Below are positions 9,539 to 16,162 of a stretch of 64,000 nucleotides of DNA, one piece after another (the stretch's first letter is position 1; each line of letters opens with the position of its first letter). A program made the translations under genes and the position numbers. The notes below the pieces were generated by a model that was not told where the DNA came from, searched no databases, and worked only from the letters and a program-made list of their open reading frames with translations. Source of the stretch: Anthoceros angustus (lineage: Eukaryota > Plantae > Anthocerotophyta); assembly GCA_010909165.1 (NCBI GenBank), contig MU008184.1:682001-746000 (forward strand), given 5' to 3'.

Positions 9539-12500
9539 ATGACGCCCATGGACTCCGCCACCGCTACCTACACCCGCCGCTTCCCCGCAGCGCTGCTCCC
9601 GGCTACAGCTGCACGCGGCCAGCGCTCGGACTCGGACGCACCCGCGCCGCAACCGCAATTCCATGCCTACTCTATCAAGTTCACGCTCCTGGAGGCGGGA
9701 GGGGATCCGCTGCAGCAGCGCGAGGCTGCGGATTTCCTCCTGCTGGCGCCTGTGGCTCTGGACCAGGAGGTTAGCGCCATGCTGCTGCAGCTGCATCTGC
9801 CGCTCGGCGGCTCCGCGGAGGCCCGTGTGCAATTCTGTGGCGTCGTGGCTTTGTCCGATGACCAGGTCGGAATTGCTGGCGTCCGTTCCATGCGATTTCT
9901 GTTTTCCGTCTGCTTGAATGAAATTTGGTGTTGCCTTTGCCTGTTGAGATCGTTCTTTCTGGGTGGAGTGGAAATTTGGATCTGATCTCCAGCTGCTTGC
10001 CTCCTCTTCTTGCGCGCAGGAGAAGCGGACCAAGCGCTTCAATCTGTGGCTCTTCAATGTCATCCTTGGACGGCAGTCTGCGCCGGGAGACTATGAGGAC
10101 GGGCCGAAAGGCTACTTCGTCCTGCCGTTGAGTCCCGAGGCCGAGGGCGGAATCGACTGGTCTAGAGTGGATTGCGCCCTTTCCTCGGGTCTGGATTGCA
10201 GCAGGAAAGCGCAGCACTCTGCCGCCGGCGTGCACCAGTCGTGGGAGATTGATTGTTTGGAAGGGGACTCCGATGTGCCACCGGAGGCGGAGGGACAAGT
10301 GCGAATGTGGAGTGGAGATGCGGACAAGGACCTTCTGTTTGATGCCATGGTCACCTGTGCGCTCAACGGCATGGTATTTTACGTTGTTGAGATATCCGGC
10401 TCCAACGGGTGGAGTAGTGTGCCACAGAAGGCTTGCTCAGCTTGTGTAACCGTCGCTGAGCATTACTGTCACAGGTCCGTGCGCCTCTGCTTGCTCTTGT
10501 CTGGAATTACAGGTGGAATTGAGCAGCAGCTGCTTTCTGTTGGAATTTGCGCATTTAGCTTGCTGCGGGGTTTGAATGCCTGCGCTGCACTTCAGGTATC
10601 ACTACAATTTGAGGCATAAGGAGCAGCCTCTGCTTAGCTGCCGCAAGCTTTCATGCGCGGCCAGCTATCTACGTAGCCAAGGTCGATGCGCAGAGTTATT
10701 GCTTGGTAAGAAAGCGGCCTGGCTTGTGTTTCCTGATAGGTCGCGCTTTCCAGGACACGACGCGAGCGTCTGAACGGAGAGAATTTAGACTCTGTGTTGC
10801 CAATCGTGTGCGCAGGTGGGAACTTTTCGAAGCAGATGGAGATTGTGCAGCTACCTCCAGAAATCTGCGTTTTGCACGTAGGATTGAAGGCGAAGCTACT
10901 AAGGGGTGCAATGCGGCTGCCAACTGTGCTTTATAGCTTGGAGAAAGCACTACTGGCTGCAGAGCTGCGGGACCGTATTGGGATATCCATGTCTTCCTTC
11001 AAGGTTCAGATGCTTTTGCTTCACTGGGGACCTCCTTGATATTTTCGTACCTGCCTCAAAGGTTTGACTTCAGCTCGGATGCTTTTGCTTCAGGTGAAAA
11101 AGGGACTGGCTATGTTAGGTCATGCTTGAGAGGGACGCATGATGGTTCGCAGGCTCTGATCCTGCCGCAAAGTTCCGGGTGGCGAAATTTCTTGCAGTGA
11201 TTTGATTGCCGACTTGGTGTGGTGTTGCAGGTTCTACAGGCGCTGACACCAGAGTCGTGTCAGGGAGGTAAATCCTACGAGTCTCTTGAGCTACTTGGAG
11301 ACAGTGTCTTGAAAATTGCAGGGGCAACTTATCTCTACATACGTGACATGTCCATGGATTATGAAACTCTTGGAGATGAGATGTATGAGCTGGTCAAGAA
11401 CAAGACACTCTATCAGTTTGCTTTGGGACGGAACTTGCCAGAATATGTGTTTGCAGATATATTCACTCCACGGGGTTGGGTCGCACCAGGTCCCCTTCAT
11501 GCATCTGCCTCAGATGTCCAGTCATGTTTGACAGCAACTCAGCGGCTGTCCTACAAGACTTTAGCAGATCTTGTTGAGGCGTTAGTGGGAGCATACCTCC
11601 TCCACGGCGGTTTCAAGGCTGCTCTCCACGTCATGGCCTGGCTTCAGATACCCATTTTTTTCCCCCCAGCCAGAACTCTGGCTTTAGATGTCTGCTATTC
11701 AGGGACAATGAGTGGGATGCTTCTTTCACAGTTGACAGATGTTCAGAAGCTGCAAAGTAAACTGGGATATCGGTTCAAGAATCTTCACCTTTTGGCTGCT
11801 GCTCTGCACTACGTTCCTGCGGAACCTGCAAGTGTCTTCGTGTTCCAAAGACTGGAATTTTTAGGGGATGCTGTGCTTCATTTCCTCGTTACCCGGCATT
11901 TTGTGTCTGCTCATCCCGACTTAGAGCCGGGCAAGCTCAACGATCTAAAGCAGGCTACTGTCAACAGTGAAAACTATGCTTCTGTAGTGGTTCGCAACGG
12001 CTTGCACGTAAACCTGCAGCAAGTATCTCCAGTTCTTGAGGATGAAATACTGAAATATGTATTAGACTTCTGCCAGGAGAACGGTGCTAGCAGGTGGAGT
12101 TCTTTTGGTCTCTCAAGTCAGACTTCACCGAAGGTGAGTTTCGTCTCTGTCTTTTCCCTATTATGCATAGATCAAATAGCAGACTTTCACACCAAACCAA
12201 GTAGTGTCTACTGTGCGAGCTTCTTCTCTGACGATACTGAGCAGGTGGTAGGAGATATCCTTCAGACAATGGCAGCTGCAATATTCCTTGATTCTGGGTT
12301 TGATGCGGAGACCGTGTGGAAAGTAGGTGCCATCCTGGATCCGTTGAGTCCCTATGCACTGGCTTGTGTTGCTCACTTTTATATTCTGCATTCACTGTAG
12401 TTGAGTGAAGCTTGCTTATCAAATGTGTTCCTTAAAGGTGGTGGGAAAATTGTGCGCAGGTGCTTAGACCGTTCCTTGAGCCTTTGGTGACTCCCGATAC

Positions 12501-12868
12501 TGTCATCTTGCAACCAGTGAGGCAACTCGAAAAAATTTGTCACGAGCAGAACTTGAGGTTGGATATGGATTGCGTATGTCTGAGTGGAATGGTGATTGCG
12601 CGAGCAGTTATCAATGACGTGCCTTGTGGTATTTCGAAACATCAAGAAAAGCGAGTTGCCCGAAGATTAGCTGCTGCAAAGGTTCGCGATTGATTCTCAG
12701 CTGATTTCATCCACAGCAACGTAAATTGGCAGCGTACATTCTTCAAAGATGCTGCGAAATGTTTTGGCTGATAACGAAGTCTTCACTGTGCAGGCTTTAC
12801 TTCAACTAGGGACTGGATTTAAGCTGGCGAACACTAGGACAGCTTGTGAGTATCCAAAAGCTCCTTGA
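9539..12868 (+). CDS. Minimal (helicase-less) Dicer-like protein, ~780 aa: platform-PAZ-RNase IIIa-RNase IIIb-dsRBD
   Basis: In-frame GT-AG exon chain 9539-9865, 10020-10474, 10596-10681, 10816-11003, 11231-12133, 12245-12322, 12460-12681, 12794-12868 (alternative end ~13006 if 12846-12935 is spliced). Motifs: YFVLPL..IDW, LRHKEQPLL, VQLPPEIC, YESLELLGDSVLK, KTLADLVEALVGAY, FQRLEFLGDAVL, PKVVGDILQT, QPVRQLEKIC..KRVARRLAAAKAL. Confidence 0.92.
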
Positions 12869-13777
12869 TGGGGTCGTTTTCCAGATTCTCCCCCGCCCTC
12901 TGTACTAACTTTCTGGTTGTCTCTGGTCTGTCTAGGTACCACGGCCCTACAGCCTCTGCATTCCATAATCCATGCCTGTTCCAGGTCAGAGCATTTGGTG
13001 ACATGAGTTGTTGGGCAGTTCGTCGGTGGATTGGGTGCCAAGCATCCCGTAAGCCTCCCGATGTCCTTTGCCGCCAGCAACGAGCTGTCCGAATACCTCC
13101 GAGTTATGAAACTGAGTTGGCAGCGGTTCGAATGTCCTAAGAAAAATGCAGCGGAGCCCCCCAGGCCGCCTCGGGAAAGGTGATATTCGGTTACAAGTCT
13201 CCCTACCGGTTGCTGTCATTTGTCCGTTACCTCATTCTCGGTTGCTCCGACATTTGCAGTGGCGTAAAGCAGTTTGTTGCTGCTGTCAGCGTACAACTTC
13301 TGGCGCGGTGATGCTCAGTTGCGCAAACAACAAAGGGAATGGATCATGCGAATTTGCTCTTTATGGGAGGGCTTGACGAGGGTTTCTGTGTCTTGGGAAC
13401 TGAACTCTGTCCGTGTCCCCCTGTCCCAGCGATCCATGGAAGTACATCTTGTCGAACATCACTTTCATCGTGTGACTTACTACATTTCTGGGCATGACCA
13501 TGGTGTATGTGGTGGTCTTGAGTTGTTGCCCTGAGAGACTGGAGATCAATTCACATGCCAGTACTTCCCGCCTCGTACGGGCTCTTGCATGAGACACCTC
13601 ACTTCTCTCAGTGAGAGCCATAACTCGTCTTGGAATTTGGAAGTGCACAGCATCTTCAGGGTCCAGGAGGAAAAGTACAAATGCAGGGGTACATTTAGTG
13701 AAATTGTAGTTTGCAACCGCAGCATTGCGAATGGGGACATACATGTAGTCTTTTGCACCTACCAACCAAGAAAGGAA

Positions 13778-16162
<2,385 letters not shown>

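What the first reader, a model, noticed from the sequence alone, without database searches (positions are those of the whole stretch)
12245..12290. RNase IIIb of the minimal Dicer has its catalytic Glu replaced by Gln (possible single-site or nicking Dicer)
Seen: RNase IIIa keeps all four acidic residues (ELLGD; ADLVE). RNase IIIb keeps EFLGD but reads PKVVGDILQTMAAAIFLDSG, where plant DCLs have PK(V/A)LGDIVESIAGAIFLDSG; the codon is CAG at 12263-12265. Known: this Glu corresponds to the metal-binding residue mutated in human DICER1 RNase IIIb hotspot tumours (E1813), which abolishes cleavage of one strand. Inference: an otherwise intact gene encoding a naturally half-active Dicer. It could nick dsRNA, give strand-biased or unusual-length small RNAs, or act as a dsRNA-binding regulator.
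Basis: partly seen in the sequence, partly recalled or inferred. Interest (0 to 1): 0.8.

Follow-up and report, generated by a model that had tools for sequence, protein, structure and literature searches.

The report
Minimal Dicer with one dead site
A plant "minimal Dicer" gene lacks a key metal-binding residue in one of its two RNA-cutting sites, and every relative I could check across land plants lacks it too, so this enzyme family probably cuts only one strand of double-stranded RNA.

Summary
Codon 12263-12265 is CAG (Gln). DNA and RNA-derived contigs of the same organism show no difference there.

The Gln aligns with human DICER1 E1813 and Arabidopsis DCL3 E1329, the Glu that bridges both catalytic metals of RNase IIIb.

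The gene belongs to the land-plant MINIMAL DICER-LIKE (mDCL) clade (100% branch support). The loss is not private to this gene. None of 13 clade members carries Glu: 10 have Gln (CAG or CAA where DNA is held), one has Lys and two have Pro. They span this window's lineage, liverworts, moss-like metagenome contigs, lycophytes and ferns. Other RNase IIIb carboxylates have also decayed in several lineages. All four RNase IIIa carboxylates are invariant in the eight aligned full-length members and present in the rest. RNase IIIb as a whole is as conserved as IIIa.

Best reading: mDCL is an ancient single-active-site Dicer in which IIIb is a structural partner and IIIa cuts one strand. Published DCL3-E1329Q cuts only the non-measured strand, to 23 nt. 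Physcomitrium mDCL is reported as required for 23-nt siRNAs.

No biochemistry exists. The Physcomitrium sequence and the primary mDCL paper could not be read.

The parts
9539..9865 (+). First coding exon of the mDCL-type gene (ATG at 9539 or 9548). The 5' limit of the transcript is not defined.
   Evidence: The frame is open from 9326 and the Met positions come. The donor after 9865 is seen in spliced contigs. A contig of organism C reaches back to 9513.
10020..10474 (+). Exon 2, the PAZ-region equivalent.
   Evidence: Spliced contigs X2, X7 and X21. It matches the PAZ-bearing part of orthologues (Pfam PAZ in P0271 and P0123). No Pfam hit when the exon is scanned alone.
10596..10705 (+). Exon 3.
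   Evidence: GT..AG joints. The frame carries through.
10816..11003 (+). Exon 4, the PAZ-to-RNase III connector with the mDCL-typical block LPPEIC...RLP(S/T)VLY.
   Evidence: The block is nearly invariant in alignment A2.
11231..12133 (+). Exon 5, holding all of RNase IIIa and the N-terminal half of RNase IIIb.
   Evidence: Pfam Ribonuclease_3, E = 4e-28, two stretches. Catalytic codons located. Covered by the X2 spliced contig with 0 differences.
12245..12322 (+). Exon 6, the C-terminal catalytic motif of RNase IIIb (VVGDILQTMAAA...).
12263..12265 (+). CAG = Gln in place of the metal-bridging Glu (human E1813, AtDCL3 E1329, Aquifex E110).
   Evidence: Orthologues use CAA or CAG.
12460..12681 (+). 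Exon 7, a C-terminal dsRBD-like domain.
   Evidence: Spliced contigs. The orthologue model has the alpha-beta-beta-beta-alpha order here. Pfam dsrm is only sub-threshold in orthologues.
12794..12845 (+). Exon 8.
12936..13006 (+). Coding part of exon 9, with the stop codon TGA at 13004-13006. The exon runs on to 13179 as 3' UTR.

Best explanation
This is the orthologue, probably from a hornwort, of the land-plant MINIMAL DICER-LIKE (mDCL) gene. It encodes PAZ, RNase IIIa, RNase IIIb and a dsRBD-like tail, with no helicase. Its RNase IIIb site lacks the Glu that bridges both catalytic Mg ions and has Gln instead. I infer that this loss happened once, in the ancestor of the mDCL clade, and was never reversed. 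IIIb would then be a pseudo-nuclease that still pairs with IIIa inside the molecule and helps hold dsRNA. IIIa, whose four carboxylates are invariant, would be the only cutter. The predicted action is one cut per binding event, in the strand whose 3' end lies at the PAZ end (the non-measured strand). On short Pol IV-RDR2-type duplexes that releases a 3'-terminal fragment of about 23 nt and leaves the other strand whole. Shown here: the residue, its expression, its clade-wide state, and the asymmetry between IIIa and IIIb. Inferred: loss of IIIb catalysis, retained IIIa catalysis, and the link to 23-nt siRNAs.
For: CAG stands in the DNA and in spliced contigs. The Gln column equals human E1813 and AtDCL3 E1329. 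The exhaustive protein search separates an mDCL group (203-402 bits) from canonical DCLs (175 bits or less). A tree built without the Gln exon gives the 13-row mDCL group 100% SH-aLRT support, and its branching follows plant phylogeny. In alignment A2 of eight full-length members, the IIIa positions E, D, D, E are invariant. In IIIb the first Glu reads E,E,V,E,G,E,A,A; the second-motif Asp reads D seven times and V once; the last Glu reads Q,Q,Q,Q,K,Q,P,P. L001 has Gln (CAA), L002 has Gln (CAA), metagenome L009 has Gln (CAG), and L011 has Gln plus loss of the other three IIIb carboxylates while IIIa is intact. Mean column conservation is 0.64 in IIIa and 0.64 in IIIb, so IIIb is constrained as a fold but not at its carboxylates. 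An AlphaFold model of an orthologue's connector-IIIa-IIIb-dsRBD module (pLDDT 76) superposes as a whole on DCL3-RNA and on dicing-state Dicer, with TM 0.69-0.74. From the literature: this Glu coordinates both metals and is essential (PMC3867540). DCL3-E1329Q loses domain B cutting, yet domain A still cuts the bottom strand to 23 nt (PMC8846587). Drosha E1045Q and E1222Q each abolish cutting of one strand (PMC3197686). E1813 is a metal-binding hotspot whose mutation (E1813G was the variant assayed) removes 5p miRNAs (PMC6695490). Physcomitrium mDCL is reported as specifically required for 23-nt siRNAs (PMC5144951, citing Coruh 2015).
Against: No mDCL has been assayed in vitro. Gln can still bind a metal through its carbonyl oxygen, and the window's protein keeps three of four IIIb carboxylates, so weak or Mn-dependent activity is not excluded. 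The Physcomitrium mDCL sequence, the only one with mutant data, could not be obtained, so the link to 23-nt siRNAs rests on assumed orthology. One review (PMC10721683) describes the mdcl phenotype the opposite way (23 nt up, 24 nt down). The Ginkgo member's C-terminus is mis-annotated and was not checked. The structural model is of an orthologue, not of the window's protein.
Confidence: 0.6

Rival explanations
1. RNase IIIb is still active. Gln, together with the three remaining carboxylates, supports enough metal binding for mDCL to cut both strands like an ordinary Dicer.
For: The window, L001, Marchantia paleacea, Riccia fluitans, Diphasiastrum, Selaginella and L009 keep E, D and D at the other three IIIb positions. 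Gln itself is strongly conserved with both codons, which could mean the side chain has a role.
Against: The same Glu-to-Gln change abolishes cutting by that domain in DCL3 (PMC8846587) and Drosha (PMC3197686). This Glu bridges both metals (PMC3867540). Ferns, Calypogeia, L002, Riccia sorocarpa and L011 have replaced further IIIb carboxylates with A, V, G, S, N, P or K. That is not expected if the site were catalytic.
Confidence: 0.1
2. mDCL does not cut at all. It is a pseudo-enzyme that binds dsRNA or DCL3 and modulates product size as a cofactor.
For: Non-catalytic RNase III proteins exist, for example a chloroplast one (PMC3867540). Published genetics places mDCL together with DCL3 (PMC5144951).
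Against: All four IIIa carboxylates are invariant in eight full-length members from liverworts, lycophytes and ferns. They are also present in the window, L001, L002, L009 and L011, while IIIb positions drift. Such asymmetry is hard to explain without selection for IIIa catalysis.
Confidence: 0.17
3. Two mDCL molecules, or mDCL plus another DCL, pair so that two active IIIa-type sites face one duplex, restoring a double-strand cut.
For: Class 1 RNase III enzymes work as homodimers, and engineered heterodimers nick dsRNA (PMC3867540). Dependence on DCL3 is reported (PMC5144951).
Against: The orthologue model places IIIa and IIIb in the usual intramolecular arrangement, superposable on DCL3 and Dicer in the dicing state. 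IIIb is as conserved as IIIa, as expected if it remains IIIa's partner.
Confidence: 0.08
4. The Gln is an artefact, or the gene is a decaying pseudogene (base-call error, unused exon, or private mutation).
For: The DNA run X1 is noisy, with 1-nt deletions inside exons, and it may be the assembly's own source.
Against: Spliced contigs of the same organism agree base for base. The reading frame is intact over nine exons. Twelve orthologues lack Glu, and those held as DNA use both Gln codons.
Confidence: 0.01

Closest known systems
MINIMAL DICER-LIKE (mDCL) of Physcomitrium patens and MpMDCL (Mp6g09830) of Marchantia polymorpha
   Same: [quoted passage not shown] It forms its own clade, which is also present in vascular plants (PMC13738684, PMC5144951, PMC10721683). 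The window's gene falls in a clade with the Marchantia paleacea, Riccia, Calypogeia, Selaginella, Diphasiastrum, Ceratopteris and Ginkgo members.
   Different: None of the four held papers that mention mDCL discusses catalytic residues. The word 'catalytic' does not occur in PMC13738684. The two named proteins themselves could not be fetched, so their residue is untested here.
Arabidopsis DCL3 E1329Q (engineered RNase III domain B mutant)
   Same: The same column and the same Glu-to-Gln change. The mutant cuts only the non-measured strand, to 23 nt (PMC8846587).
   Different: It is a laboratory mutant of a full-length, helicase-bearing DCL. In mDCL the change is natural and ancient.
Human DICER1 RNase IIIb hotspot E1813
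   Same: The same column. It is a metal-binding residue, and its mutation selectively abolishes 5p-arm cutting (PMC6695490). E1813Q itself is reported in tumours (papers listed).
   Different: It is a somatic, disease-associated change in a miRNA-processing Dicer, not an evolved state.
Trypanosome editosome endonucleases (KREN1-3 paired with non-catalytic KREPB partners)
   Same: A natural RNase III pair in which only one domain is competent for catalysis, so that one strand is cut and the other preserved (PMC9508840, PMC3867540).
   Different: The pair is an intermolecular heterodimer of single-domain proteins in mitochondrial RNA editing, with no PAZ and no small-RNA role.
Giardia 'minimal Dicer' (PDB 2FFL)
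   Same: The PAZ plus tandem RNase III architecture without a helicase (PMC7827160, PMC10328071).
   Different: Giardia Dicer is described as sufficient to generate ~25-nt small RNAs from dsRNA (PMC7827160) and lacks the C-terminal dsRBD. It is only a distant sequence match here.
Aquifex aeolicus RNase III E110Q (PDB 1yz9)
   Same: The same residue change, in the mutant crystallised in complex with double-stranded RNA (entry title).
   Different: It is a bacterial homodimer in which both sites are mutated.

Membership tests
Dicer / Dicer-like (class 3 RNase III) | Two tandem RNase III domains in one polypeptide | tested here: met
   Pfam Ribonuclease_3 with two stretches in exon 5. The second domain is completed by exon 6.
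Dicer / Dicer-like (class 3 RNase III) | PAZ domain upstream of the RNase III pair | tested here: inconclusive
   No Pfam hit when the window's exons are scanned one by one. Orthologues P0271 (35.3 bits) and P0123 (29.8 bits) pass the PAZ cut-off of 28.8, and the window's exons 2-4 align to that part. The joined protein was not scanned.
Dicer / Dicer-like (class 3 RNase III) | Intramolecular IIIa-IIIb processing centre | tested here: met
   This was tested on an orthologue only. The model of P0123:325-805 (pLDDT 76, pTM 0.74) aligns over about 480 columns to DCL3-RNA (TM 0.74) and dicing-state Dicer.
Dicer / Dicer-like (class 3 RNase III) | Four metal-binding carboxylates in each RNase III domain | tested here: not met
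   IIIa has E, D, D, E. IIIb has E, D, D, Q. 114 of 119 representative Dicers have D..E in this motif.
Dicer / Dicer-like (class 3 RNase III) | N-terminal helicase and DUF283 (canonical plant DCL) | tested here: not met
   No Pfam helicase or DUF283 hit in the upstream exons or in full-length orthologues of 609-820 aa. This absence is what makes the protein 'minimal'.
mDCL clade of land plants | Phylogenetic placement with helicase-less PAZ-IIIa-IIIb proteins, apart from DCL1, 2, 3 and 4 | tested here: met
   A 13-row clade with 100% SH-aLRT and a stem length of 0.88, in a tree built on exon 5 only, so the Gln column is excluded. There is also a score gap.
mDCL clade of land plants | Orthology to the named Physcomitrium mDCL and Marchantia polymorpha MpMDCL | not testable with these tools
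   Neither protein came back from any search. Marchantia paleacea P0271 stands in for the Marchantia gene.
Single-site (nicking) RNase III pairs | One catalytic and one degenerate RNase III domain facing one duplex | tested here: met
   Met at the sequence level: IIIa is invariant and IIIb carboxylates are lost.
Single-site (nicking) RNase III pairs | Cleavage of only one strand | not testable with these tools
   This needs an enzyme assay.

The most novel reading that the evidence does not exclude
mDCL is a dedicated strand-specific Dicer of non-flowering land plants. With only RNase IIIa active, it cuts the non-measured strand of Pol IV-RDR2-type duplexes and so makes the 23-nt siRNA class, or hands a nicked duplex to DCL3. 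This would be a division of labour between two Dicers, fixed since the origin of land plants.
Probability: 0.35. Interest if true: 0.8.

Novelty: new variant of a known kind. Interest (0 to 1): 0.68.

Why it matters
Dicers are defined by two active sites that make a staggered double-strand cut. Half-active Dicers are known as laboratory mutants and as tumour alleles. Here the same change appears to be the evolved, conserved state of a whole Dicer clade found in this window's lineage (probably hornworts), liverworts, moss-like contigs, lycophytes and ferns. That would make mDCL a natural case for asking what a one-strand Dicer is for. It also offers a concrete, testable mechanism for the unexplained requirement of mDCL for 23-nt heterochromatic siRNAs. 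Finally, it gives a ready-made comparison for the consequences of DICER1 E1813 mutations.

Tried and rejected
1. Sequencing error or unused exon: rejected by spliced and DNA contigs and by orthologues.

2. A change private to this species: rejected. Syntenic L001 has Gln with another codon, and the whole clade lacks Glu.

3. Getting the Physcomitrium or Marchantia polymorpha mDCL sequences failed. Three word searches and the exhaustive search did not return them. The profile search was swamped, probably by the poly-Gln start of the first query row, and did not even return Riccia.

4. The primary paper (Coruh 2015) is not held, by DOI or by PMC id.

5. The Selaginella fragment P0004 could not be traced to DNA. 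The longer XP model P0302 served instead.

6. Pfam on the window's PAZ and dsRBD exons one by one gave nothing.

7. dN/dS was not attempted. At 63% protein identity to L001, synonymous sites are likely saturated. The sequences of organisms B and C are not retrievable.

8. The joined spliced protein of the window was never built for, or sent to, any search or fold tool. Exons were used by reference, and database orthologues were used where a contiguous protein was needed. In scripts, only a carry of up to 2 bases across exon borders was used to check the frame.

9. Of the 80 metagenome loci, only L009, L010 and L011 were read. The rest, including a contig from a human-gut metagenome, were not opened.

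Full report
**Observation**

The window reads GTG GTA GGA GAT ATC CTT CAG ACA from 12245, so CAG (Gln) stands at 12263-12265.
- Contigs of three organisms that skip introns join 12133 to 12245 and 12322 to 12460. The introns are GT..AG, as are seven further introns of the gene (borders checked).
- The reading frame runs through nine exons to a TGA at 13004-13006.
- Run X2 has the same organism code and the same sample as the best DNA holder X1. Its spliced contig covers exon 5 and 68 bases of exon 6 with no difference from the window. X1 differs at four places only, all elsewhere.
- The Gln codon is therefore real and the exon is used. X1 and X2 may come from the sample that gave the assembly, so independent support has to come from other species.

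**What the residue is**

Exon 5 (11231-12133) holds a full RNase IIIa and the first half of RNase IIIb (Pfam). Exon 6 completes IIIb.
- IIIa has E, D, D, E. IIIb has E, D, D, Q (codons located).
- Diphasiastrum P0123, a contiguous orthologue that also carries Gln here, was searched against the solved structures. The Gln column falls on residue 1813 of human Dicer (5zak_A) and on residue 1696 of Arabidopsis DCL1 (7eld_A).
- It also falls on chain residue 1370 of DCL3 (7vg2_A). That chain is 41 residues longer than the 1580-residue native protein. If the extra residues are an N-terminal tag, this is E1329.
- According to PMC3867540, this Glu (E110 in Aquifex, E117 in E. coli) is coordinated to both catalytic metals and is functionally essential.

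**Which gene it is**

The exhaustive protein search with exon 5 separates two groups: a small one at 203-402 bits and canonical plant DCLs at 175 bits or less. Named members of the small group are helicase-less proteins of 609-906 residues. They come from Riccia fluitans, R. sorocarpa, Marchantia paleacea, Calypogeia fissa, Diphasiastrum complanatum, Selaginella moellendorffii, Ceratopteris richardii and Ginkgo.
- Two orthologues pass Pfam's PAZ threshold.
- A maximum-likelihood tree built on exon 5 alone, so without the Gln column, gives this group 100% SH-aLRT on a long stem. Inside it the branching follows plant phylogeny: the window with L001, then liverworts, lycophytes, and ferns with Ginkgo.
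- This is the clade the literature calls MINIMAL DICER-LIKE. It was first described in Physcomitrium and recently in Marchantia polymorpha, and is said to be present in vascular plants (PMC10721683, PMC13738684, PMC5144951).
- L001 is a 28-kb contig of another species. It carries the orthologue (63% identity in exon 5) with the same neighbours, CoaE on the opposite strand followed by a dCMP/cytidine deaminase.
- The tools code organism names. I suspect a hornwort, from GC near 50%, compact genes, and a tree position outside liverworts, vascular plants and the moss-like pair. This is my inference, not a tool result.

**The key result: the loss is clade-wide and one-sided**

| Member | Last IIIb Glu position | Other IIIb changes |
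|---|---|---|
| Window | Q (CAG) | none |
| L001 | Q (CAA) | none |
| L002 (liverwort-like) | Q (CAA) | first Glu is V |
| Marchantia paleacea P0271 | Q | none |
| Riccia fluitans P0121 | Q | none |
| Calypogeia fissa P0300 | Q | first Glu is V |
| Diphasiastrum P0123 | Q | none |
| Selaginella P0302 | Q | none |
| Riccia sorocarpa P0301 | K | first Glu is G |
| Ceratopteris P0132 | P | first Glu is A |
| Fern-like transcript P0124 | P | first Glu is A; second-motif Asp is V |
| L009 (L010 is the same gene) | Q (CAG) | none |
| L011 | Q (CAA) | all three other carboxylates lost |

- L009, L010 and L011 are metagenome contigs that form a lineage of their own inside the clade. From memory, their IMG identifiers belong to peat-moss-associated samples. 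That is unverified.
- None of the 13 members has Glu at this position.
- In the eight aligned full-length proteins all four IIIa carboxylates are invariant. They are also present in the window, L001, L002, L009 and L011.
- Mean column conservation is the same in IIIa and IIIb, 0.64 each. IIIb is therefore maintained as a domain while its catalytic carboxylates are free to change.
- Among 119 representative Dicers from all eukaryotes with a well-aligned motif, 114 have D..E. Four of the five exceptions are mDCL proteins. The fifth is a short DCL1-like protein of Selaginella.

**How it most likely works**

The same Glu-to-Gln change is the standard way to switch off one RNase III site.
- In Arabidopsis DCL3, E1329Q removes domain B cutting. 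Domain A still cuts the non-measured bottom strand, to 23 nt on a 1-nt-overhang substrate (PMC8846587).
- Drosha E1045Q and E1222Q each abolish cutting of one hairpin strand (PMC3197686).
- DICER1 E1813 is a metal-binding hotspot, and the E1813G mutant loses 5p miRNAs (PMC6695490).
- Aquifex E110Q was crystallised on dsRNA (PDB 1yz9 title).
- An AlphaFold model of the orthologous connector-IIIa-IIIb-tail module (pLDDT 76) superposes as one body on DCL3-RNA (TM 0.74) and on dicing-state mammalian Dicer. Its tail has the alpha-beta-beta-beta-alpha order of a dsRBD.

I therefore read mDCL as a single-active-site Dicer. IIIb is the structural partner, and IIIa makes one cut in the strand whose 3' end lies at the PAZ end. 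Invariance of IIIa argues against a wholly non-catalytic protein. Decay of further IIIb carboxylates in five lineages argues against residual IIIb catalysis.

Physcomitrium mDCL is reported as specifically required for 23-nt siRNAs and as acting with DCL3 (PMC5144951, citing Coruh 2015). That fits the 23-nt product of DCL3-E1329Q. This link is inference for three reasons: I could not obtain the Physcomitrium sequence, the primary paper is not held, and one review states the phenotype the other way round (PMC10721683).

**Comparison with what is known, and novelty**

The gene family is known. A natural precedent for a pair with one competent and one degenerate RNase III domain exists in trypanosome editosomes (PMC9508840, PMC3867540), but there the pair is made of two separate single-domain proteins.
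- The four held papers that mention mDCL, and two recent Dicer reviews, say nothing about a natural loss of a catalytic residue.
- A phrase search for degenerate or non-catalytic RNase III domains found only the trypanosome work and the DICER1 tumour literature.
- I rate this a new variant of a known kind. If Coruh 2015 already describes it, that rating falls to 'already known'.

**Limits**

- No enzyme data exist.
- The base at 12263-65 in organisms B and C was not displayed.
- Those two organisms also hold a second, highly covered contig that fits only 12100-12132 and 12261-12294 and then diverges. This is unexplained.
- The window's joined spliced protein was never assembled for a search or a fold. 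Everything was done exon by exon by reference, or on database orthologues.

Noticed in passing
window 12100-12132 and 12261-12294 (runs X7, X21): Organisms B and C hold a second short contig (depth 15 and 308) that fits only these two pieces and then runs into similar but different letters on both sides. It could be a diverged second mDCL copy, a haplotype or a mis-assembly. It is absent from organism A's runs.
   Followed up: no
window 13004-13259: The stop codon TGA lies at 13004-13006, but spliced contigs show a further GT..AG intron at 13180-13259. This is an intron in the 3' UTR more than 150 nt after the stop, a feature typical of NMD-sensitive transcripts.
   Followed up: no
P0149 (Selaginella moellendorffii XP_002989272.2, 608 aa): A different Dicer-derived short protein (RNase IIIa, IIIb and two dsRBDs, no PAZ; groups with a DCL1-sized protein in the tree). 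It has Asn for the second-motif Asp of IIIa and Gln for the last Glu of IIIb, so the same Glu-to-Gln change arose independently.
   Followed up: partly
L011:3001-4942 (metagenome contig Ga0116229_10000909): This mDCL-like copy has lost all four RNase IIIb carboxylates (RLSFLGN and LGALIQT) yet keeps all four in IIIa. Its sister L009 keeps E, D, D, Q.
   Followed up: partly
window 13778-14317 (-) and 15502-16162 (+); L001:8296-8733 (-) and 10060-10398 (+): The gene order mDCL, dephospho-CoA kinase (CoaE, opposite strand), dCMP/cytidine deaminase is conserved between the window and a species whose mDCL exon is only 63% identical.
   Followed up: no
window 11321, 11472, 11661, 11790 (run X1): DNA contigs of run X1 lack 1 to 3 bases inside the RNase III exon. 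The window's frame is open there and the RNA contigs of the same sample agree with the window. This looks like noise in that run rather than an error in the window.
   Followed up: partly
literature (PMC5144951 versus PMC10721683): Two secondary sources describe the Physcomitrium mdcl small-RNA phenotype in opposite ways: 23-nt siRNAs require mDCL, versus 23 nt increased and 24 nt decreased in the mutant.
   Followed up: no
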